Assembly: GCF_006345805.1 (NCBI RefSeq) | Contig: NC_043002.1 | Coordinates: forward strand, 39,184,001 to 39,248,000 | Reading direction: 5' to 3' | Source of the DNA: Octopus sinensis | Lineage: Eukaryota | Length of the DNA: 64,000 nucleotides | In this document: positions 9,960-64,000 of the stretch, one piece after another | How positions within the stretch are numbered: the stretch's first letter is position 1 | Layout of the letters: every line of letters starts with the position of its first letter | Made by a program: the position numbers and the translations under genes | Notes under the pieces: model-generated | What the model was told of the DNA's origin: nothing | What the model saw: only the letters and a program-made list of their open reading frames with translations | Database searches by the model: none

Positions 9960-10232
9960 CATGTGTGTATGTGCACACACATGCGTGCATGAATACATAC
10001 ATGCATGCATGCATGTATGCATACATACATACATACATACATACATACATACATACATACATACATACATACATACGTGCATGCATACATACATACATAG
10101 ATACATACATACATGCATGCATGCATACATACATACATGCATACACACATACATAAGTACGTACGTACATACATACATACATACATACATACATACATAC
10201 AGACAGACAGACAGACAGACAGGCAGGCAGGC

Positions 10233-10284
<52 letters not shown>

Positions 10285-10943
10285 TGGTGGAATGTACCAG
10301 TGAAGACCTCAATCAAATGCAAGTACAACATACCTGATATAATGATTTGGGATAGAGAAGAGAAACCGTGCAAAGCTGTGGAAATCAACTGCCCAGCAGA
10401 TGTTAACATAAAGCTGAAGATCAGTGAAAAAGAGAATACCTATGCTGAACTATTGAGAAATCTACAGTTACTCTATCCAGATTACAAGTTCATGTTTATA
10501 GCTGTAATTATTGAGGCCCTGGGATATGTAACACACTGCCTAAATACCAGTCTTGAAAAATTAGGCTTCTCAAAATCAGGAAGGAGAAAGCTAATTCCAA
10601 TCCATCACGGAATTATAAAAATCTGTAAAACTTTCCAGAAGTTTATCATTTAAATATATATGAGCATGTCTAGATATGCAACTATATGCATTAGAATATA
10701 TACATAAAACATGCAAATCTCCACATATATACACACATACCTACATACAAATATGCATACATACATACATACATACATACATACATACATACATACATAC
10801 TTACAACATACATACATACATACATACAAAAGTGCCCTGTTGTTGATGTTGAAATTCCAGTGTAGTCTTGGATCTAGGTTAGAAACCAGTTATTTCTCTA
10901 TTGACAAGAAATCTTGATATAAACTGAATACTGGCATACATAC
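10285..10943 (+). mobile_element. 5'-truncated R4/Dong-type retrotransposon: restriction-like endonuclease C-terminus plus 3' UTR
   Basis: ORF to 10653 reads WWNVPVKT..KYNIPDIMIWD..AVEINCPADVN..EKENTYAELL..IIEALG, the RLE motif of the R4 clade; flanked by (CATA)n/(CAGA)n and catacatac. Confidence 0.88.
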
Positions 10944-15459: not shown

Positions 15460-15651
15460 AGGTGGCGAGCTGACAGAAACGTTAGCACGCTAAGCGGTAT
15501 TTCGTCTGTCTTTACGTTCGAATTCCGCCGGAGTCGACTTTGCCTTTCATCCTTTCGGAGTCGATAAATTAAGTACCAGTTGCGTACTGGATCGATATAA
15601 TCGACTGGTCCCTCACCAAAAATTTCGGGTCTTGTGCTTAGATTAGAAAGG
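15460..15651 (+). mobile_element. SINE family D monomer (tail 1)
   Basis: 16-bp TSD aatatttatatc(t/a)cct at 15444-15459 and 15652-15667. Confidence 0.9.
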
Positions 15652-15929
15652 AATATTTATATCACCTTGGCAGTTTGTGTTGCAATCATTTATGGTCCAT
15701 CAGCTCTCTTTAGAAAGATTTAGAGAGCCGGCAGCCTTCTAGTTGTGACATATGAACAGCACATGTCAATCTACATTTTTATTATAAATCTCTTAATGTT
15801 CAAAACTTTTGGACTTTCTAAGTACTTGCATATCACGAGTAATAGTCCTCTTCCGTGATATCCCTAATAAACGTCTCAGACAATCTAATGAAAATATTCA
15901 AGCAGTCTCACATTTGATTGATGGTGGGA

Positions 15930-16680: not shown

Positions 16681-16915
16681 TCTTATTTCTTTACTACCCA
16701 CAAGGGGCTAAACACAGAGGGGGGACAAACAAGGACAGACAAACGGATTAAGTAAATTATATCGACCCCAGAGCGTAACTGGTACTTTATTTATCGACCC
16801 CGAAAGGATGAACAGCAAAGTCGACCGCGGCGGAATTTGAACTCAGAAAGTAACGGCAGACGAAATATCGCTAAGCATTTCGCCCGGCGTGCTAACATTT
16901 CTGCCAGCTCACTGC
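16681..16915 (-). mobile_element. SINE family D monomer (tail 2)
   Basis: Head, core and tail ending ...gtgggtagtaaagaaataaga. Confidence 0.88.
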
Positions 16916-21198: not shown

Positions 21199-23245
21199 CA
21201 GGGTTGCCGAAGTTAAGTATATTTGGCTTCATAGTAAAATTACTAAAGCTTCTGTGAAATTTATTAAATTGTTTTAATTTACGTGCTACATGCTCAATAA
21301 AATATTTTCAGTTTTATCGTCTCCATTACATGAAATTTTACTTTGTTGCAAAATTTTATAAGAATGTGTTTCAATTTTAATGTTTGAATGCGTTTTATAA
21401 GAGTTAAGTGCGCAAGCCTAAACTAGTTTCAAATGATATTGATTCGATGCCATGATTTCTTAAGTTGTCACTCTTAAGTGTCAGTATTCATTTTCCATTC
21501 GTGCTTTGTTTAATTGTCATAATTTTATTTAATTCATAGTATAATATGATTTCTAATTTATAATATAATTTATAATTTATAATATAATTTATATTTACCT
21601 TAATATAATGATTGAGAAAAGGAACGATAACAATAATGTTAGAAAGTAATGTTAGAACTGAAAATGAATGCGTTTGTGGAAAAGCCCGAGCTCCTTTTTG
21701 CAATATTTCAATTTAAATCATCTTTCATTGTTTCTACCTAATGCATGCTATGAATCAGAAATTGCTGGAGAAATCAAAAAGTGGCTGTACAAAAGGAGCG
21801 GTTATTTTTCGTTATATAATTGGAGAGTAACACTTGGAAATTCTTATAACACACGTAAAGAATATAAGAATATACAGAATATTAGATTTCCATTCAATAT
21901 TGATGAAAGTGCAAATATGCATCCAAAAACAACTCGTTCTAACAGTTAGATAATATGGTAGCCATATTGAAGAAAAAACTGTTAACAAAGCTTTAACTCT
22001 TGGAAAGTCAATTATTTTACAGCTCAAGGCATTTACAATTCTATAGTATTTTTTTTTCTGCTAAAATGACAACCTATTTAAAAGTACGATAGGCTGTCCA
22101 AGTGAAAATGCAAGCGTAATGTTGAGTTCAAAAAGTAGTGTTCAAAGTCTTCCGAAGTACGATATCTATTTATACAACGTTGTTTTACGTGCATCCTATG
22201 CATGTTTTGAACTTCCAACTTCATTAAAAGAGCTAACTAGAATGGTTTATTTATATTTGTTAATTAAACCGCAAAGGCGGCGGCTTGGCAGAATCGTTAG
22301 CAGAGTCGGGCAAAATGCTGAGCGTCATTTCGTCCGGCTTCCTGTTCTGAGTTCAAATTCTGCCGAAGCTGACTTTGCCTCTCAGCCTTTCTGAGTCGAT
22401 AAAATAAGCACCAGATGAACACTGGAGTTGATCTAATCGACTTACTCCATCCCCTAAAATTGCTGGCCTTTTACCAAAGTTTTAAATCTATATTTATCAA
22501 ACAATTGAAATAGATTATTTGAGTAAGCAGGATTTGAGGAAGTTATCGGAACTTGTCGGAAACAGGTTTTATGATAGTAATACTCAATAGTTAACACTTC
22601 AGTGAGTGGGTGAAAAATTACTAAATCAAGAGCAAGCATTTCGCCTTATTTTTGCTTCAGTGAAATTATATAAAATGACTTTAATAGCTACAACACTAGA
22701 AACTTGCAGTAAATCTTCTGGTATCTACAATACTAGAAGGTTAACAGAAGCCAATTATAAAAATCTACATTTGCAACTTTTATTCAACCATACGTAAATA
22801 AAATAGATTTGGAATTTCAAGCTGAGAGATTCATAATTTATAGGTTACGTAACTCCATTAACAGTAGCATAAAAGGTAGTCTGGTTAATTTGATTAAAAT
22901 AGAAATACTAAAATTTACAAGATTAACATCAGTATTTCTTCATTTCACCTCAAGTGAAATATATCATGGAATAAGAACTAAAAGTATCTTTTTAGAATAT
23001 TCTTTAAAAATCTAAACTAAAGAACATTAAGAATATCAGTTTAAGGCACTGAATTGTTATGTTAAAGCAATGTGTAAACGTTTTGCATTCTGTAGTATGT
23101 TCGCTAATTTATAATTATTTGAAGACCCAAATCCAGAAAATGCGCTTCAAAGACATCCATCTTCAATTAATCCACTGGCCATGAAATTTCTCTTGAGATA
23201 AAAAGAATGTTAAGACACCAGAATGGAATCTGGGCTGGTAACTTG
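21199..23245 (+). mobile_element. Decayed hAT (Tip100/ZNF862-like) transposon
   Basis: Candidate ends cagggttgcc and tggtaacttg; relic motifs FNIDESANM..KQLVL, AQGIYNSI, SENASVM.SSKSSV; interrupted by a SINE at 22275-22485. Confidence 0.6.
22275..22485 (+). mobile_element. SINE family D
   Basis: Head, B box and core match other copies. Confidence 0.8.
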
Positions 23246-23274: not shown

Positions 23275-23700
23275 AATATTGATTTCAAATTTTGGCACAA
23301 CGCCAGTAATTTCGGGGAACGGGCCAAGTCGACTACGTTCCACCCCAGTGTTCTACTGATACGAAAGGATGAAAGATATAGTCGACCTCAACGGAATCTG
23401 AACCCAGAATGTAAAGACGGACAAAATACCGCTCATAATTTCGTCCGGCATGCAAACAACTCTGCCAGCTCGCAACCTCCGAATCAGAGAAATACTGGTT
23501 TCAAATTTTAGCACTAGGCCAGAAATTTCGGAGGGGTGGGTAAGTGCTCAACTAGTACCTATTTTATCGATCCGAAAAGTAAGAAAGAATAAGTCGACCT
23601 CTGTGGCATTTGAACTCAGAACATAAAGATGGATGGACTACCGCTAAACATCTTGCCCTGCGCAGTAACGATTCTGCCAGCTCGCTACCTTCAGAATCAA
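23275..23700 (-). mobile_element. Two degenerate SINE family D copies
   Basis: aaagtcgacctc..gaactcagaa..ctgccagctcgc motifs twice. Confidence 0.7.
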
Positions 23701-24664
23701 AGAAATATTTGTAATATTTAAAGTTCTCTCGTTAATTACAGCGAAATTAATAAATTTACTGCCATTACCTCACTCTTCAGTTGTTTTTCTTGATAAACAA
23801 CATGTATGCAAAGGTTCGATCTCAGCTAGTACAGAAACGCTAATTGCTCTATTATATGAAAAATAAAGTCTTTAAAAAGCACATATACGGAATGGCGACT
23901 GTTTGAAAAATTGTACGAAAATATTGGAGGAGACTAAATTGTATATCAATGAAGGAAAAAAATGAACTCAAAGAAGATGAATTTGTTATATGTTGTGAGT
24001 TTTTTTAATACGAACATTTCAAGAATTTGCGGGAAATTTAGGGAAATTATTTGGCAAAACCAAGAAAATCACCTCCAAACCTTAACCACTAGCACTGTTT
24101 TGCACCCATCATCAAACCCCCAAGACGAGTATCGAATGGTGGTATCGTTCATTACTCTGTGAATCAATAACACCGAATATGTCTGAGACGGTTGTTACAT
24201 TTTTAAGTAACATTTCCTTAAGATTATTCATCCTTTTACCAGTTAGCCAATGGCAAGTAACGTTTTGTCCTGAGATATGACTACTATAAATAGTAACGTT
24301 ATAACGACGCGCCAACAAGTAGATTGATATGTGGTCGCTTGATCTGCTAGAAATAGTGACCAAATCTGTCTCGGATTACACCCTACGGCAGTCTTAAATA
24401 AGGAATGAATGCGTTGGTGTACACCAAGCAATGTGTATGCACTGTGGCTATTAAGTTAGTGAAATTACATGTAGTTAACAGCTGTGTTAAAATGATATAA
24501 CAAAATGAGAAGATAGTGAAATAACATAACAGACAGTAAGATGCTTTGTTGTTCGCTTAGATTTTAATGCTTAACTGTATAGATAGATGAAGTAGAATAG
24601 ATAAAGAGATGTTGAGACAGATAAAGAGAGGAAGGTAGACAAGGAGAGGGAGAGAGAGACAGAC

Positions 24665-24700
<36 letters not shown>

Positions 24701-24949
24701 CTAGTTATCCTTATCACTTTCTCTACCTATACGGTTAAACATTAAAACTTAAACCAACAAACCGTCATATTATTTATTCTAATATGTTGTCATTTATTTT
24801 TATATTATTTTATCACATTGGTGGAAACAGCAAATAAGCACACTAGTCATGAGCAACCATTTTCGTGTAGCGGGCAACATGAGACATGATTCATTATCAG
24901 GCGGGACGCTCTCTTATAAAAAAAAAATTAAGATATTTCGTTAAGCTTT

Positions 24950-25330
24950 TATGTTCTGAGTTCAAATTCCGCCGAGGTCGACTTTATCTTTTATCCTTCC
25001 AAGATTGATAAAATAAGTACTAGTTGAGCAGTAGGGTCGATCCCCTTGCCTGAAAATTTCTAGCCTTGTGCCAACATTTGAAATCAGTATTTCGTTAGGC
25101 GTAAAGGTGACGATCTGGCAGAATCGTTACTGCACCGGACAAGGACAAAAATGCCTGGCTGTATTTCGTCCATCTTTACGTTCTGAGTTCAAATTCTGCC
25201 GAAGTCGACTTTGCTTTCATCCTTTCGAGGCCGATGAAATAAGTACCATTCAAGAATTGGGGTCAAGTCGATGTAATCGACTATACCCCTCTCCTCAAAA
25301 AAAGTCTGTTGGTTCCGAGCCAAAATTTGT
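24950..25330 (+). mobile_element. Two SINE family D copies
   Basis: gagttcaaattc..gtcgacttt..aagtac motifs. Confidence 0.75.
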
Positions 25331-37570: not shown

Positions 37571-39903
37571 ACCAGTAGCACTCGAAAGTGGCCTGACATG
37601 TGGAATACGTGGTGGAGTAAGAAGGCTGATGAGATACAGGCGGCGTCGGATTCCAATAACACAAAGCTGTTGTATGGTCTCTGGCGAGAAGTTTATGGAC
37701 CGACTTCTTCTCTGATGACACCACTTCGAAGCAGGGATGATGGTAAAGAACTCTACGTGAATTTTGCGAAGGTGGCGAGAACACTTTGATGAACTTTTGA
37801 ATCAGCAGTCTGTAGTTAGTGAGGATGTTCTCAATCTCATCCCTGAATTACCTGAGAAGGCGGCTGTTGCAGAACCACCAACGCTGGAAGAAGTTGCTGT
37901 GGCTGTCTCAAGGATGAATAATGGGAGGTCTCCGGGTATGGATGGCATACATGTGGAGTTGCTACAGCATTGTAGTGAGAAACTTCTGCAGCAACTTCAC
38001 TCTTTGTTTGGTAAGATATGGGCTAGTGAATCTGTACCTGAGGACTGGAGTGATACAGTAATGGTGGTCTTATATAAGGGAAAGGGCAACAGGAATGATT
38101 GTTGTAACAATAAGGAAATATCATTGCTTCTTGTCATAGTAAAGGTTTTATGCAGGGTACTTCTGGATCGTCTGCTGAAACATGTTGCAGATTGTGTTCT
38201 TCCAGAAAGTCAATCTGGCTTTTGCGTGGGACGCGGCACTGCGGATGTGATCTTTTCAGCTAGACAGCTTCAGAAGTGTATGGAACAGGGTCTGGATTTA
38301 TATCAGGTTTTTGTCAATCTAACAAAAGCCTTTGATACTTTTAATAGAAATGCACTGTGGAAAGTCCTCCAGAAACTTGGGTGTCCTGAAAAGTTCCTTG
38401 CTTTGGTTAGGTCTTTTCACGAAGACGAAGGGTTTGGTTAATGTTTGAGATAAAATGTCGAAGCCTATCTCTAGAGTGAAACAGGGGGAAATTCTGACAC
38501 CGACCCTATTTGCCATATATTTTGCGATGGTGTTCTGTATTGCGTTCAAAAACTGCAGATATGGTGTTTACATCCATTATCGAACCTCTGGCAGCATGTT
38601 TAATATCAGGCGCTTTGCTGCAAAAACAAAGGTATTTACCTCTATCATAAGAGGCCTTTTGTATGCAGGTGATTGTGATCTAGTAGAGTACACAGAGATT
38701 GATATGCAACACATTTTGAATGCATTCTCTGATGCTTGCACTGCCTTAGGATTGACAGTCAGTCTCAAGAAAACTGTTGTCATGTACCAACCTGCCCCTG
38801 GTAGGCAGAATAGCGAACCAAATATCTATGTGTATGGTAAATGACTTGGTGTAGTTGATCAGTTTGTCTACCTGAGAAGTACTCTTAATAGATACAGCAA
38901 TTTGGATAATGAAATTCCATACAGAATTAGGAAAGCAAGTGATGCTTTCGGAAGGCTAGAAAGGCGCCTCTGGAGTCGGCGAGATATATGCAGAAAGACA
39001 AAGATAAAGGTGTACAAGGCGCGTGTGCTCTCTTCTTTATGCCTGCGAGACGTGGGTCACATATCGATACTACCTTAAACAACTGGAACATTTCCATTAG
39101 ATGTGTCTCAGACGGATCTATGGCATTAAGTGGGTTGACCGCATCAGTAATCTTGAGATATTGGAAAGCTCTCGGTGTGAAAGAATAGAAGCTCTTATAT
39201 TGAAGCAAAGGCTCAGATGGAGTGGTTATCTGGTTAGGATAAAATATTCAAGGATGCCAAAACAACTCTTTTATGGAGAGTTTGCTAAAAGAGAACGACC
39301 TCCACATAAACCAAAAAAGAGGCGTAAAGATTTGCTGAATGTCTCCTTAAGAGATGCTAGCATCTCTCCTGACACACGGGAGGGCATAAGTATTGATCGT
39401 AGCAGGTGGAGAAGGATTGTGTGCGAGGGGACAGCTACTTTTGAGAAATCTCGAGTTGCGCATGAGAAAATAAGAAGGGATGTCGGGCAGGGCATCGCTG
39501 TTGCACTTCCAGATGGTAAGGGTCTTACTATGATGCTGACTTGCAGTGTGTGCAAAACAATGCCTCAGTAAAGCTGGACTCAAGAGTCATCTTCGTAATC
39601 ATAAAGCGAGACTGATGATTGACAACCAGGCCGCTGGTGGTGGTGTTACACACCATACTAATCATATCTGTCAGGCATGTGGAAGGGAATGTGATTCGGT
39701 GGGAAGACTTAAACGACATGCAAAGGTACATGAAGCCCAGTTACAACTACAGCCGGCTATTGCCGGTAAAGGTTTTAGCTACCAATTCTGTACAAGACAT
39801 TGTAGATTTTTAGCTGGGCTAAAAAGTCACGTTCGGTCACAGCACCGGTAACAGTTAAGCTTCAAACAATAGCCATACTCGATAACGAGGGGTCAACCAT
39901 CAT
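37571..39903 (+). mobile_element. 5'-truncated RTE (BovB-like) LINE: RT pseudogene with three C-terminal C2H2 fingers
   Basis: Fragmented ORF: SPGMDGI..LYKGKG..LPESQSGF..VNLTKAFD..VKQG..LLYAGD..GLTVSLKKT..FVYL..LRWSG..RMPKQLFYGE; 3' stem-loop CTCG-ATAA-CGAG at 39878-39889; no endonuclease domain. Confidence 0.95.
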
Positions 39904-47953: not shown

Positions 47954-48570
47954 ATTCTTTTCTACTCTAGGCACAAGGCCCGAAATTTGGGGGGGAGGGG
48001 GTCAGTCGATTTCATCGATCCCAGTACGCAATGAGTACTTAATTTATCGACCCCGAAAGGATGAAAGGCAAAGTCGACATTGTCGGAATTTGAACTCAGA
48101 ACGTAAAGACAGACGAAATGCAGCTAAGTATTTCGCCCGGCATGCCAACGTTTCTTATTTCTTTATTGCCTACAAGGGGCTAAACATAGAGGGGACAAAC
48201 AAGGACAGAGAAAGGGATTAAGTCGATTACATCGACCCTAGTGCGTAACTGGTACTTAATTTATCGACCCCGAAAGGATGAAAGGCAAAGTCGATCTCGG
48301 CGGAATTTGAACTCCGAACGTAGTGGCTGATGAAATACCTATTTCTTTACTACCCATAAGATGCTAAACGCAGAGAGGACAAACAAGGATAGACAGACGG
48401 ATTAAGTCGATTACATCGACCCCAGTGAGTAACTGATACTTATTTAATCGACCCCGAAAGGATGAAAGGCAAAGTCGACCTCGGCGGAATTTGAACTCAG
48501 AACGTAACGGCAGATGAAATACCGCTAAGCATTTCGCCCGACGTGCTAACGTTTCGGCCAGATCGCAGCC
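47954..48570 (-). mobile_element. SINE family D trimer
   Basis: B boxes at 48086, 48303 and 48487 (spacings 217 and 184); one head, two tail-2 units, terminal tail 1. Confidence 0.9.
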
Positions 48571-57665: not shown

Positions 57666-58394
57666 AAGGCAACAAGCTGGCAAAATGCTTAACGGTATTT
57701 CATGTGCCGTTACGTTCTGAGTTCAAATTCCACCGAGGTCGACTTTGCCTTTCATCCTTTCGGGGGTCGATAAATTAAATACCAGTTACGCACTGGGGAC
57801 GATGTAATCGACTTAATACCTTTGTCTGTCCTTGTTTGTCCCCTCTGTGTTTAGCCCCTTGTGGGTAGTAAAGAAATAGGTATTTCGTCTGTCTTTACGT
57901 TCTGAGTTCAAATTCCGCCGAGGTCGACTTTGCTTTTCATCCTTTCGGGGTCGATAAATTAAGTACCAGTTACGCACTGGGGACGATGTAATCGACTTAA
58001 TACCTTTGTCTGTCCTTGTTTGTCCCCTCTATGTTTAGCCCCTTGTGGGTAATAAAGAAACAGGTATTTCGTCTGCCGTTACGTTCTGAGTTCAAATTCC
58101 GCCGAGGTCGACTTTGCCTTTCATCCTTTCGGGGTCGATAAAATAAGTACCAGTTACGCACTGGGATCGATATAATTGACTTAAGCCGTTTGTCTGTCCT
58201 TGTTTGTCCTCTCTGTATTTAGCCCCTTGTGTTATTTCGTCTGCTGCTACGTTCTGAGTTCAAATTCCGCCGAGGTCGACTTTGCTTTTCATCCTTTCGG
58301 GGTCGATTAAATAAGTACCAGTTACGCACTGGGGTCGATGTAATCGACTATACCCTCTCCCAAATTTTCAGGTTTTGTGCCTACAGTAGAAAGG
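57666..58394 (+). mobile_element. SINE family D tetramer
   Basis: gttcaaattc at 57721, 57906, 58090 and 58258 (185, 184 and 168 bp apart); terminal tail 1. Confidence 0.92.
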
Positions 58395-58604
58395 TCTCTA
58401 TATCTTTATAGGTAATATGTCAATGTCTTTATAGAAGAGACCACACAATATTCAAGTTCTGCCAATTACAAACAGGATAGCTAACACATTCCTGATTTGC
58501 TGTGATGTTTTAATTAAGTAACTAGGTCGATGTTAATTCCTTAGCCTTTTCAGATCGCTTCTGCATAGTGTTACAGTTATTTGATATTGTTACATCGATT
58601 GCTG

Positions 58605-59090
58605 GGCGGAATTCTACTTTAAGCAGCCCATATAACCCCTCATAACTTTTTTTGGTTCTTTAATTTTCAGAAAAATATTTGTAAATTTGTGTTCTACACA
58701 CGTCTATAACAAATCAAATTAAAATTTTTTATTTTAATTTTTCGAAATTAATTTTTTTTTTTTTAAATGGGCAGTCCGAATTTTTGGGCTTAAATCCTAG
58801 CAATAAACTATTAAATCTGTTTATGGGGAGAAAGATATAGAAAAACATCAATAAGTCAGTGACCAACAACGAGGAAGGTATGAGAAGGTCATGAGATGTG
58901 CTAAAAATAACTGATGTGCTAAACATAATCCCTTAAATCACACAATTTTTCTTTTCTGTTTCGGTTTTTGCATAGTCGTATGACTTCCCGTGTATAGAAC
59001 ACAAATTCACAAAACTTTTCTGAAAGTTCCAAACAATAAACAAAGTTATGAGGAGTTAGTTATATGACGCGTGTAAGGAAGAATTCCGCC
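58605..59090. mobile_element. MITE with long (~100-bp) imperfect TIRs, superfamily unassigned
   Basis: Left ggcggaattc..ctcataacttt..ttcagaaaa..ttgt.aatttgtgttcta.acacg is mirrored at 58988-59090. Confidence 0.75.
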
Positions 59091-59099
59091 GATTACTGA

Positions 59100-59366
59100 A
59101 TTATGTAGAACGGCTGTTATTGAGTTCAAGACATATCTGTCTCTCAGTCGAGTATCTTGTATAGATTGCCTCCATCAACATTTTGTTGTTACTTTTTCTT
59201 TTCTTTTTCTTTCATTTTTCTTTTTTCTTTTTTTTTTTTCAAGGAGGCGCACTTAGTATTCTTTTGTCGTGTAACTATAGCGAAAGATGTGAAACGGTTG
59301 TTATTGAGTGCAGGACATATCCATCACTCAGTTGAGTATTCTGTATAGATCGCCTCCATCAACATT

Positions 59367-59406
<40 letters not shown>

Positions 59407-59970
59407 GTTGTTGTTGTTGTTGTTGTTGCTGTTGTTGTTGTTAAGCAACAAGACGGGTAAGGGTTATTAGGTGATGGTCTAGGGCTTAGGTGCGGGAGAC
59501 CCCAGACCTTGGAAAAAAAAAAACTTTGGTCATCTTGTTGTACTCGAGGGCTCTTTGTTGACGCCCGACACCACTGGGAGGTGGCCCTCGAAGTCGCTGG
59601 AAATGGAGATTTCCAGGTCCAAATTTTTGAACGGCTGCTGTTGTTGTCGTTGTTGGTGTTGCTTTTTTTTTCCAAGGAGATAACGTTCTGTGGCGTAACT
59701 GTAGAGAAAAATGTACGAATATACTGTTAAAAAAGCTTGCGGACAGATCTCCGAAGAACACCGTCTCATCTACTTAATGTATCACTCGAAATGGAAGACA
59801 AGGACTGAGAAAGAGGTGCTGCTCATGAGAAGATCTTGATATCAAGAGAATGCAAGTGGCTACGCGGTGCCTACGAGCAAACCGATTATTGAATTCTGAC
59901 TGCAGCTTGTAGTCGGGAGAAGTCAAGGAGTACTCGAATCAAAAGTAATGGGAGTTATGGGTTCCTTCAT
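59100..59970 (-). pseudogene. Possible decayed polyQ-containing ORF with internal repeats
   Basis: ATG at 59970 is in frame with ORF 59530-59769; recurring peptide IF(R/L)YSY.T..Y.LL.KKK..QQQ and an ~82-bp repeat at 59109 and 59293; many stops. Confidence 0.35.
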
Positions 59971-60015
59971 CCTCTCTTTATGGCGTTTTTTCAACTCTTT
60001 GAGAGAGTGGACGCC

Positions 60016-60023
60016 TTTATATA
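60016..60023 (-). promoter_or_regulatory. TATA box candidate (TATATAAA)
   Basis: About 45 bp upstream of ATG 59970; AGTT falls about 30 bp downstream of the TATA. Confidence 0.35.
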
Positions 60024-60059
60024 TTTCCGTTGTGTCTGTGAATGGGACACACGTAAATT

Positions 60060-60905
60060 ATTAATGTTCAGTTAATGCGGATGTTTGATCAAAGGTCTTT
60101 TCATTAATGCAGAAATGTGTTCGAATAATTCAACCATTGGGCGAAGGTCAGTCAATTCGATCAGAGTAGCTGTCTATTCGATTAATGCGAACACTTGGCG
60201 CAAGTGTTTCGATTAAAGCTAACTTTTCGTCATAAATTACATCGATTATTGGGGAGCTTTGATTATATGTGTTTGGCTAATGCAGACCTTTGATCATGAG
60301 TGTTTCATTAATCCTGACATGTGATGGCATAATGCGAACCTTTGACATAATGACATAATGCGAACATTTATTCGATTAATGCAGACATTTTGGACATAAC
60401 CTTCTTTGATTAATGCAGGGCTTTATTCATAGGTCTATTTGATTAATGCGGATATTTGATCCATACAATTGTTTGATTAATTACAGCACTTGATCACAGG
60501 TTTGTTTGATTGATGCAGATCTATGAACATGTGTCTGTTCAATTGTTGCGTTCCTTTGATCACAGTTCTCTTCAATTAATTACACATTTTTAATCTTAAA
60601 TCGGTTTTATTAATGTGGATCATTGATATTAAGTCTGCTCAGTTAATACTCTTCATTTGTAAGTAGGACCCATGTAAAAAAAAAAGAAGCAGTTGCTTAA
60701 TTAATGCCAACGCTTGTTCATATGTCGGTTCGTTTAATGTAAATCTTTGCTAATTGATCTGTTTAGTTTATGCTATCTTTTGGTGATACGTCTGTCCAAC
60801 TTGTGTTAGATATTGATCATAGGTGTCTTCAATTGATATTGACCTTTGACCACATGTCTCTTTAATCGATACTGACCATTCATCATAGGTCTATTGCTAA
60901 TACTG
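60060..60905. repeat. Degenerate ~33-bp minisatellite, ~25 units, consensus about TTGATTAATGCAGACATTTGATCATAGGTCTGT
   Basis: GATTAATGC-like motif at 60374, 60408, 60441, 60475, 60508, 60541, 60574, 60608, 60641, 60699, 60732 and 60765. Confidence 0.85.
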
Positions 60906-61127
60906 TTTATTTTCTTATCGTTAATAGCTGTTATATTATCAATTAGATTACATGTAATAGATTACGCAAATTTTCCAGATTTTACTAACTACAGAGGGAA
61001 AATGCTTCTCCAAAACCCTAAAGAAAATTCCAGGAATACTCGAGGCAAAATTAATTCCGGTGGGTGCAACACAAATGCTTAATGCACACGAATACGCCTA
61101 ATAGCACGAGCCAACAATAAACTTTTA

Positions 61128-61325
61128 GGATAGTCGCTCGACTTGCTAGAAATGGCATCAACTCTCCCTCACATCACACACTCCATTGTCTTAAAACCAG
61201 GAATGACACGCGTGATAATGTTGTTCTAGATAGAAATATTGAATGAAAGACAGGATAATCACGGCTGGAATGAATTTAATTATTGGTTTGATTAGGACTG
61301 ACATGGGCTGAACAGCAACAACAAG
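61128..61325 (+). mobile_element. SINE-like repeat, family E
   Basis: gtcgctcgacttgctagaaatggca..cacggctggaatg..gggctgaacagcaacaac. Confidence 0.65.
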
Positions 61326-62115
61326 AGCAACCTAAATAATAAATCCATATTGTTCTGACATCCTAGAAACAGTAAAGATGAGATGAAATCTGGATTGAAA
61401 CGGGAAGGAATGTCTCTGTCTTGACTTTACTCCCCCAGAAAACGACATACGAAAAACTATCGTCACTTAGCAACCAAAAACAAAATCACTTCAGAACAAC
61501 CAACAAGATTCTATTTTGTCTGTTTTTAATTCCTACTGATAAATTGATTTTTCTTTCTTTATTTCTTTTCTGCTTTATCTATTTATTTATTTATTTATAT
61601 CTATCTTACTTTCTCTCTATTTATCTGTCTCTTTTTCATATTTGTATTTTTTTCTCTTTGTATCAAAGTAACAAAATTAATACCAATATTAAATAGAAAA
61701 ATAAATATCTGCGATAATTTCAAATACACAGTAGAGATAAATACGTAAATAAATGAATAAGTATATAATTGAATAAATAAATAAATAAATAGATAAATAG
61801 ATAAATAAATAAAGACGGTAACGAAATTGCGAGTTACTTTTGCACGATGATGCAGAAGATATACGTTACATTGTACGAGACGTGCAAATCCTAAATAGCT
61901 ACTTCTCTTAAGCTAGTGAGTAACACCACCAGTTATAGATTGCTAGGCAATAAATCTATTTACTTAATTAGTCAATCCTATCTGATATTCGACTCTTTCT
62001 CCGTTAATTTCCTGTTTTCAAGAATTGTCGCCATTTGTAAATACCTACCATCCCGCTTGCTTTCTATCTCCCCTCATTTCTAAGGCTTTCTTTATTATCT
62101 GTTTAACTGAGTACT

Positions 62116-62218
<103 letters not shown>

Positions 62219-62394
62219 AGATAAATAGGCTGAGAGTAAGATAGATATAAACATATAAATAGATAAAGCAAGCGAGAAATAAACCAGTCTCACAGCGACA
62301 TGGTTTCGTATTCGCTCATACTGCGTGTCACAAGCCACTCGTCATCCCGAAGTTGTAGCATAAAAAATACATGGGCGTTCGAGTTGGTCAATAT

Positions 62395-62510
62395 CTTATT
62401 TCTTATTTCTTTATTGCCCACAAGGAGCTAAACATAGAGGGGACAAACAAGGACAGACAAAGGCTACGCATTTCGCCCGGCGTGATAACGTTTCTGCCAG
62501 CTCGCCGCAA
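62395..62510 (-). mobile_element. SINE family D head fused directly to tail 2 (core deleted)
   Basis: Element ends ...ggcaataaagaaataagaaataag. Confidence 0.8.
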
Positions 62511-63788: not shown

Positions 63789-64000
63789 GATAGATAGATA
63801 GATAATAGATAATAGATAGATATACATGTATGTGTGTGTGTATTATATAAAATAATTACGTAGAAATGCATTTGAATTTCCAAAAGTGAAATAGTAGTCG
63901 TGAATACGAAAATTCCCTCAAAACGTTATATAATCAATACACATATTCCTTCAGACAAGATAGTGAGAGAAAAAAAAACACAATTATTCTCTCAGAATAC

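What the first reader, a model, noticed from the sequence alone, without database searches (positions are those of the whole stretch)
59100..60905. Unexplained cassette: 33-bp TAAT array, TATA box, then decayed repeated polyQ ORF (minus strand)
About 25 regularly spaced GATTAATGC units lie directly upstream of TATATAAA (60023-60016), with an ATG about 45 bp further on (MKEPITPITFDSSTP...). That ATG is in frame with the 79-aa ORF MRRCSSEICPQAF..YIFLYSY..KKKQHQQRQQQQPFKNLDLEISISSDFEGHLPVVSGVNKEPS. The five intervening stops are each one substitution from R, Y or C codons, although that stop density is also what random sequence gives. Downstream, an IFRYSY/KKK/QQQ/NVDGG module recurs. The layout suggests a pseudogene from a lineage-specific multicopy family driven by an array of homeodomain/POU-like sites, or the cargo of an unrecognised mobile element. 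I recognise no domain.
Basis: partly seen in the sequence, partly recalled or inferred. Interest (0 to 1): 0.75.

Follow-up and report, generated by a model that had tools for sequence, protein, structure and literature searches.

The report
Decayed minisatellite beside chance ORF
The "cassette" is ordinary non-coding octopus DNA: an old, decaying 33-bp tandem repeat lying next to several unrelated short repeats whose stop-poor sequence happens to give an open reading frame, so it is not a gene or a pseudogene.

Summary
Together they do not make a functional unit.

**The array (minus strand, about 60058-60917)** is a real tandem repeat of about 26 units with a 33-bp period. It is far beyond chance but heavily decayed, at about 70% identity to its consensus. 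Decay follows base composition: A/T positions are kept and G/C positions are lost. The TAAT core is kept no better than other A/T positions.

**The TATATAAA, the ATG and the five in-frame stops** are all at chance level.

**The 79-aa ORF** has no homologue in 5.8 billion or 1.84 billion proteins and no Pfam domain. About 90% of it lies inside two unrelated DNA repeats:
- A poly(A)/(CAA)n-bearing module present in three tandem copies. The KKK is an A-run and the QQQ is a CAA run, and a later copy of the same DNA motifs falls in a different frame.
- A GC-rich dispersed octopus repeat of about 190 bp. It recurs at 85-92% identity in an Octopus sinensis contig, with no array nearby. The match hops between reading frames and shows no third-codon-position bias.

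An inverted-repeat element with an 8-bp target duplication cuts the last module copy.

Verdict: a repeat mosaic of low interest. I could not test whether the array belongs to an uncatalogued transposable element.

The parts
60058..60917 (-). Decayed 33-bp minisatellite of about 26 units. Consensus is GATCAAAGGTCTGCATTAATCAAACAGACCTAT, and one more weak unit reaches about 60949.
   Evidence: Periodicity. Unit alignment. A unit profile hits only this locus in the window. Mean identity to consensus is 70%, Jukes-Cantor distance 0.38.
60016..60023 (-). TATATAAA, about 35 bp past the last recognisable array unit.
   Evidence: Read directly. The motif occurs 23 times in the window and TATAAA 93 times, so its presence here is near chance.
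59923..59970 (-). 15-codon ORF MKEPITPITFDSSTP*, inside the unique spacer 59770-60057.
   Evidence: No repeat match in the window or in L015.
59530..59769 (-).
   Evidence: No homologue, not in the protein collection, no Pfam domain. About 90% of it lies in repeats.
59640..59749 (-). Module copy A (diverged), including an A9 run and an imperfect CAA run (59669-59639). This supplies the 'YIFLYSY...KKK...QQRQQQQ' part of the ORF.
   Evidence: Local alignment to copy B scores 59, against shuffle mean 25, sd 4.8 and maximum 43.
59443..59634 (-). GC-rich dispersed octopus repeat of about 190 bp with an internal T11 run. This supplies the C-terminal half of the ORF.
   Evidence: 85-92% identical to three pieces of O. 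sinensis contig VCDQ01005406.1 (L015 23699-23856, 24062-24123, 24206-24422). Matches protein model P0121 twice with frame hops.
59367..59442 (-). (CAA)25 microsatellite, the tail of the GC-rich repeat. It is the 'polyQ' in one frame and polyN or polyT in the others.
   Evidence: TRF: period 3, 25.7 copies, 94% matches. Three-frame translation.
59193..59374 (-). Module copy B with an A-rich tail (59193-59240).
   Evidence: (family D4, spacing 184).
59099..59190 (-). Module copy C, 86% identical to copy B and interrupted at its end by the inverted-repeat element below.
58597..59098 (.). MITE-like insertion at 58605-59090. It has inverted arms of about 100 bp (77% complementary) and an 8-bp target-site duplication, CAGTAATC (59098-59091) and CAGCAATC (58604-58597).
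   Evidence: (pairs I1, I5).

Best explanation
The region is non-coding, repeat-derived octopus DNA with no cassette-level function. It is a mosaic built in steps.
1. A 33-bp unit expanded by slippage or unequal exchange into an array of about 26 units. The array then stopped being homogenised and has drifted to about 70% identity under the genome's GC-to-AT mutation bias. The step of formation is inferred; the decay pattern is shown.
2. About 290 bp of unique spacer follows. It happens to contain TATATAAA and a 15-codon ORF.
3. Next come three tandem copies of a short module that carries an A-run, into or beside which a GC-rich dispersed repeat of about 190 bp with a (CAA)n tail has landed. 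The composition is shown; the order of events is inferred.
4. A MITE-like element later inserted into the last module copy, creating an 8-bp duplication. This is shown.

The 79-aa ORF exists only because A-runs, CAA runs and a 50%-GC repeat contain few stop codons in any frame.
For: **The array decays neutrally**
- It is periodic far beyond chance yet decayed.
- A/T consensus positions are kept in 75% of cells and G/C positions in 58% (Fisher p = 1.5e-6).
- The ATTAAT core is kept at 82%, not distinguishable from other A/T positions (p = 0.11).
- The palindrome in the unit consensus (AGGTCT...AGACCT) is not maintained unit by unit: 67 pairs observed against 69 expected.

**The ORF is not coding**
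- No homologue in the word-indexed search of 5.8 billion proteins, even when read through its stops, and none by full phmmer against 1.84 billion representatives. No Pfam domain.
- Three minus frames and one plus frame are open over the same stretch, which is about 50% GC.
- 61 ORFs of at least this length occur in the window.
- About 90% of the ORF lies in module copy A plus the GC-rich repeat.

**The GC-rich repeat is a DNA repeat**
- It recurs at 85-92% identity in O. sinensis, with no other part of 58400-62400 alongside it, and no array units in that locus.
- The protein-level match hops between window frames -1, -3 and -2.
- The two copies inside the O. sinensis gene model are themselves read in different frames after the T-run.
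- Mismatches at codon positions 1/2/3 are 3/11/2, 8/9/3 and 5/5/3 for the three comparisons.

**The module is a DNA repeat**
- In copy A the motifs fall in the ORF frame; in copy B they fall in another frame.

**Other**
- The MITE-like element has clear inverted arms and a target duplication.
- No Rfam family and no tRNA gene was found.
Against: - I had only 34 kb of related octopus DNA. I could not search a whole cephalopod genome or transcriptome.
- So I cannot show that the array, the spacer (59770-60057) and the module are absent or unlinked elsewhere, nor that the locus is untranscribed.
- A short lineage-specific peptide or a non-coding RNA starting after the TATA box cannot be excluded from sequence alone.
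Confidence: 0.8

Rival explanations
1. The array and its flanks (about 59770-61400) are an internal piece of an uncatalogued non-autonomous transposable element that carries a minisatellite, as many DNA transposons, Helitron-type elements and foldback elements do. The downstream repeats were nested in later.
For: - Octopus genomes are about two-thirds repeats (PMC13282606, read), so the prior is substantial.
- The neighbourhood is saturated with mobile elements: a MITE-like element, the GC-rich repeat, and tandem 184-bp repeats at 57679-58404 and 62399-62465.
Against: - No second copy of 59640-61540 in the 64-kb window or in the 34-kb O. sinensis locus.
- No terminal inverted repeats, LTRs or target duplications bracket it.
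- No transposase or other protein remnant.
- No inverted second arm of the array in the window.
Confidence: 0.15
2. The array is a cluster of homeodomain/POU-type TAAT sites that drives, through the TATA box, a lineage-specific gene that is now a pseudogene, or a non-coding RNA.
For: - TAAT density is 3.5 times the window average inside the array, and ATTAAT density is 20 times.
- TATATAAA and an ATG follow in the right order and orientation.
Against: - The TAAT enrichment is simply the repeat unit copied about 26 times.
- Cores decay like any other A/T position.
- The TATA box, ATG and stop count are at chance level.
- The downstream 'gene' is made of unrelated DNA repeats read in inconsistent frames, without homologues.
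- In O. sinensis the ORF-bearing repeat occurs without the array.
Confidence: 0.04

Closest known systems
Minisatellite (tandem repeat with 10-100 bp unit) in non-coding animal DNA
   Same: Head-to-tail units with a fixed period of 33 bp, about 26 copies over about 860 bp, AT-rich. Internal duplications of several units are visible (spacings of 204-205 bp).
   Different: It is old and no longer homogenised, at about 70% identity to consensus, so TRF misses it. Nothing else distinguishes it.
SINE-like or dispersed short repeats of octopus genomes (SINEs are about 11.6% of the O. vulgaris genome, PMC13282606)
   Same: The 59443-59634 segment with its (CAA)n tail is short, multicopy and present in another locus of O. 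sinensis at 85-92% identity. It ends in a simple-repeat tail.
   Different: No tRNA-like head or Rfam match was detected. In O. sinensis its copies lie about 500 bp apart in tandem, so it may be a tandem or segmental repeat and not a retroposon. Its class was not determined.
MITEs of the hAT or P type (8-bp target-site duplication)
   Same: 58605-59090 has inverted termini, no coding capacity, a size under 500 bp and an 8-bp direct duplication (7 of 8 identical).
   Different: The inverted arms are long (about 100 bp) and foldback-like. No other copy was seen, so the superfamily is inferred from the duplication length only.
Repeat-derived spurious gene models (here 'uncharacterized protein LOC118761090' of Octopus sinensis, P0121)
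   Same: P0121 is the only database protein resembling any frame of the region. It contains the same DNA repeat twice.
   Different: The window copy is not annotated in the collection, and it needs frame shifts to follow that model.

Membership tests
Protein-coding gene or pseudogene of a multicopy protein family | Homologous proteins or paralogues with an open frame | tested here: not met
   No hits for the ORF read through its stops among 5.8 billion proteins. No hits for the 79-aa ORF by phmmer against 1.84 billion representatives. The ORF is not in the collection.
Protein-coding gene or pseudogene of a multicopy protein family | Copies related in one conserved reading frame, with substitutions biased to third codon positions | tested here: not met
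   The match to P0121 hops between frames -1, -3 and -2. The two O. sinensis copies diverge in frame after the T-run. Mismatches by codon position are 3/11/2, 8/9/3 and 5/5/3. The module motifs fall in a different frame in copy B than in copy A.
Protein-coding gene or pseudogene of a multicopy protein family | Recognisable domain | tested here: not met
   Pfam at E up to 1 returned nothing relevant for any ORF or stop-to-stop piece of 59100-62400.
Minisatellite | Head-to-tail units of constant period, beyond chance | tested here: met
   Autocorrelation at lag 33 is 0.392, above every one of 2000 shuffles, with harmonics at 66/67 and 99/100. 26 units aligned.
Functional cluster of homeodomain/POU binding sites | Binding cores conserved above their surroundings | tested here: not met
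   ATTAAT core kept at 82% against 75% for other A/T positions, p = 0.11, with the alignment biased toward the core. Retention tracks base composition instead (A/T 75% against G/C 58%, p = 1.5e-6).
Functional cluster of homeodomain/POU binding sites | Protein binding, open chromatin, and conservation at the orthologous locus | not testable with these tools
   No cephalopod genome, ATAC, ChIP or expression data are reachable.
Dispersed repeat or SINE (segment 59443-59634) | Multiple copies at unrelated loci | tested here: met
   Three pieces in O. sinensis contig VCDQ01005406.1 at 85-92% identity, with different flanks.
Dispersed repeat or SINE (segment 59443-59634) | Pol III (tRNA, 5S or 7SL-derived) head | tested here: not met
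   ARAGORN found no tRNA-like gene. Rfam gave no match at gathering score or at E up to 1. The segment is therefore called SINE-like only.
MITE (58605-59090) | Terminal inverted repeats plus a target-site duplication | tested here: met
   Arms 58605-58702 and 58989-59090 are 77% complementary over 104 bp. The flanking 8-mers CAGTAATC and CAGCAATC form the duplication.
MITE (58605-59090) | Many copies in the genome | not testable with these tools
   No other copy in the window or in L015. No genome was available.
Transposable element carrying an internal minisatellite | Defined termini or target duplication, and further copies with the same array | tested here: inconclusive
   No bracketing inverted or direct repeats and no other copy in 64 kb plus 34 kb. 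The sample is far too small to exclude this.

The most novel reading that the evidence does not exclude
The 33-bp array and the spacer carrying the TATA box could be a conserved module of an uncatalogued octopus mobile element or of a lineage-specific non-coding RNA promoter. In that case the TAAT-bearing units would act as transcription-factor or transposase binding sites, and the downstream repeats would be later, irrelevant insertions.
Probability: 0.05. Interest if true: 0.35.

Novelty: already known. Interest (0 to 1): 0.07.

Why it matters
It matters mainly as a negative result. In repeat-rich cephalopod genomes, A-runs, CAA microsatellites and GC-rich short repeats produce open frames with 'polyQ/polyK' looks. 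Decayed minisatellites with an AT-rich unit can mimic arrays of homeodomain sites. The same GC-rich repeat has already been swept twice into a predicted Octopus sinensis protein (LOC118761090), which suggests that model is repeat-derived. Flagging such loci saves effort in gene annotation. Nothing here opens a new biological question.

Tried and rejected
**External searches**
- An exact look-up of 10 window ORFs found none in the collection.
- I searched with the LINE reverse-transcriptase ORF (37764-38441) to identify the organism. The best hit was only 53% identical and none was a cephalopod.
- I scanned IMG/VR and the JGI metagenomes with an array-unit pattern (GATCAAANNTNNGCATTAATCAAA). 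This gave 3 and 11 single matches, none with an array or any other similarity to the cassette, so these are chance hits.
- Rfam (gathering score and E up to 1) and ARAGORN found nothing.
- A literature search for the SINE-like sequence string and for octopus satellite or minisatellite descriptions turned up nothing specific.

**Ideas tested and dropped**
- I considered that the GC-rich segment holds an inverted copy of the module. The only similarity is CCTTGG(A)11, which is not above shuffles, so I rejected it.
- I considered a hairpin or palindrome function for the unit (AGGTCT/AGACCT). There is no unit-by-unit co-retention, so I rejected it.
- I considered a foldback element with the array as one arm. 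No inverted array exists in the window. A second arm beyond position 64000 cannot be checked.

**What finally worked**
- A query concatenating the other-frame ORFs of the GC-rich patch hit an O. sinensis protein model. That gave access to 34 kb of octopus DNA.

Full report
**What is in the sequence**

The window is AT-rich (37% GC) and microsatellite-laden (306 TRF rows). It contains a broken LINE reverse-transcriptase remnant, so it is animal DNA.

- a periodic run of units containing GCATTAATC
- TATATAAA at 60023-60016
- an ATG at 59970 that opens a 15-codon ORF
- five in-frame stops
- the 79-aa ORF at 59769-59530
- a downstream recurrence of the IFRYSY/KKK/QQQ/NVDGG motifs

**The array**

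Base autocorrelation over 60058-60917 peaks at lag 33 (0.392), with harmonics at 66/67 and 99/100. In 2000 shuffles the best value over all lags 10-119 never exceeded 0.367.

A wrap-around alignment resolves about 26 units with consensus GATCAAAGGTCTGCATTAATCAAACAGACCTAT. Mean identity to the consensus is 70%, a Jukes-Cantor distance of 0.38. That is decayed enough for TRF to miss it. Only 4 units carry the exact 9-mer and 10 carry it within one mismatch. A profile of the unit finds nothing elsewhere in the window.

If the units were maintained as TAAT binding sites, the core should outlast its surroundings. It does not:

| Position class in the unit consensus | Cells kept |
|---|---|
| ATTAAT core | 82% |
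| Other A/T positions | 75% |
| G/C positions | 58% |

- Core against other A/T positions gives p = 0.11, with the alignment biased toward the core.
- A/T against G/C positions gives p = 1.5e-6.

This is the signature of neutral GC-to-AT decay in an AT-rich genome. The small palindrome in the consensus (AGGTCT...AGACCT) is not co-retained within units: 67 pairs observed against 69 expected.

The 3.5-fold TAAT enrichment is therefore just one AT-rich unit copied about 26 times.

**TATA box, ATG and stops**

- TATATAAA occurs 23 times and TATAAA 93 times in the window.
- An ATG within a few tens of bases is unremarkable, and being in frame with a later ORF has a one-in-three prior.
- Five stops in 67 codons compares with 3.0 expected from local composition.
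- Any stop codon is one substitution away from sense codons, so that remark adds nothing.

**The ORF**

There are 61 ATG-initiated ORFs of at least 79 aa in the window. Over 59486-59770 all three minus-strand frames (79, 91 and 115 aa) and one plus-strand frame (73 aa) are open. The stretch is about 50% GC and flanked by A-runs and CAA runs, which cannot make stop codons in most frames.

The ORF has no counterpart anywhere I could search:
- Read through its stops, it has no homologue among 5.8 billion proteins.
- By full phmmer it has none among 1.84 billion representatives.
- It is not in the collection.
- It has no Pfam domain.

**What the ORF is made of**

A query made of the other-frame ORFs hit one protein: 'uncharacterized protein LOC118761090 [Octopus sinensis]' (P0121, E = 4.6e-21).

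tblastn of P0121 back onto the window shows that 59632-59442 matches it twice, at residues 128-178 and 297-361. The match hops between window frames -1, -3 and -2. This is DNA-level similarity, not protein-level similarity.

Fetching the O. sinensis contig (L015, GCA_006345805.1 VCDQ01005406.1) confirmed it:
- Window 59420-59632 aligns at 85%, 89% and 92% to three pieces at L015 23699-24422.
- No other part of 58400-62400 matches L015.
- The array profile finds nothing in L015.
- Differences among the three copies are not concentrated at third codon positions: 3/11/2, 8/9/3 and 5/5/3.
- The two copies inside P0121 are read in different frames after the T-run.

The GC-rich patch is therefore a dispersed, non-coding octopus repeat of about 190 bp with a (CAA)n tail (59443-59634 plus 59367-59442).

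About 40 other window intervals share repeats with L015 at 72-95% identity.

**The 'module'**

Copies B (59374-59193) and C (59190-59099) are 86% identical, spaced 184 bp apart. A diverged copy A (59749-59640) aligns to B well above shuffles: score 59 against a mean of 25 and a maximum of 43.

In copy A the motifs YIFLYSY, KKK and QQRQQQQ fall in the ORF frame. In copy B the equivalent DNA is read in another frame. The KKK is an A-run and the QQQ is a CAA run.

About 90% of the 79-aa ORF lies within copy A plus the GC-rich repeat. It is a chimera of two unrelated repeats.

Copy C is cut by a 486-bp element (58605-59090) with inverted arms of about 100 bp. It is flanked by the 8-bp duplication CAGTAATC/CAGCAATC, so it is a MITE-like insertion.

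**How it came about**

The anatomy is shown; the order of events is inferred.
1. A 33-bp unit expanded by slippage or unequal exchange and then decayed neutrally.
2. Short repeats with A-rich and CAA tails accumulated about 300 bp away by tandem duplication and insertion, and their tails grew into microsatellites.
3. A MITE-like element then landed in the last copy.

Between the flanking tandem 184-bp repeats (57679-58404 and 62399-62465), nothing in the block has another copy in the window.

**What remains open**

I could not search a whole cephalopod genome or any expression data. The only octopus DNA reachable was 34 kb.

The array and spacer may belong to an uncatalogued transposable element (I put this at about 0.15). 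The prior is not small, because about 66% of the O. vulgaris genome is repeats (PMC13282606).

**Comparison with known kinds, and verdict**

Each component is an ordinary instance of a known class: a minisatellite, a SINE-like dispersed repeat, microsatellites and a MITE. The cassette as a functional unit is not supported. Interest is low.

Noticed in passing
window 57679-58404. Other copies at 2-483, 15489-15663, 16684-16911, 22286-22448, 23362-23681, 24921-25290, 47959-48561 and 62399-62465. Also L015 21885-22597.: An abundant repeat of about 184 bp, containing ...GTTCTGAGTTCAAATTCCGCCGAGGTCGACTTTGCC...TTTGTCTGTCCTTGTTTGTCCCC.... It occurs both dispersed and as short head-to-tail arrays of 3-4 units here, at about 48 kb, at the window start, and also in O. 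sinensis (87% over 687 bp). It looks like a SINE-derived tandem repeat. ARAGORN and Rfam do not recognise a tRNA head.
   Followed up: partly
window 58605-59090: A MITE-like or foldback element with inverted arms of about 100 bp (77% complementary) and an 8-bp target-site duplication (CAGTAATC/CAGCAATC), which points to a hAT- or P-type transposase. No other copy was found in the window or in L015.
   Followed up: partly
L015 (O. sinensis VCDQ01005406.1) 23699-24422; protein P0121: The predicted O. sinensis protein LOC118761090 (372 aa, no Pfam domain) contains the same GC-rich DNA repeat twice, read in partly different frames. Its C-terminal part is therefore probably a repeat-derived annotation artefact.
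   Followed up: partly
window 37764-39571 (+): A broken non-LTR retrotransposon reverse transcriptase, split into three ORFs of 225, 129 and 156 aa (Pfam RVT_1, E = 7.5e-9 and 6e-4). The closest database proteins are only 53% identical or less and come from lancelet, cestodes, fishes and unnamed ENA contigs, not from cephalopods.
   Followed up: partly
window 9961-10653 (+): A 230-aa ORF whose first half is translated microsatellite and whose second half (…PDIMIWDREEKPCKAVEINCPADVNIKLKISEKENTYAELLRNLQLLYPDYKF…) looks, from memory, like the C-terminal region of invertebrate retroelement proteins. It has no Pfam hit.
   Followed up: no
window 60057-60139 and 60262-60344: Inside the 33-bp array, blocks about 204-205 bp apart are 73% identical over 84 bp. 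This suggests an old duplication of a six-unit block (higher-order structure) before the decay.
   Followed up: no
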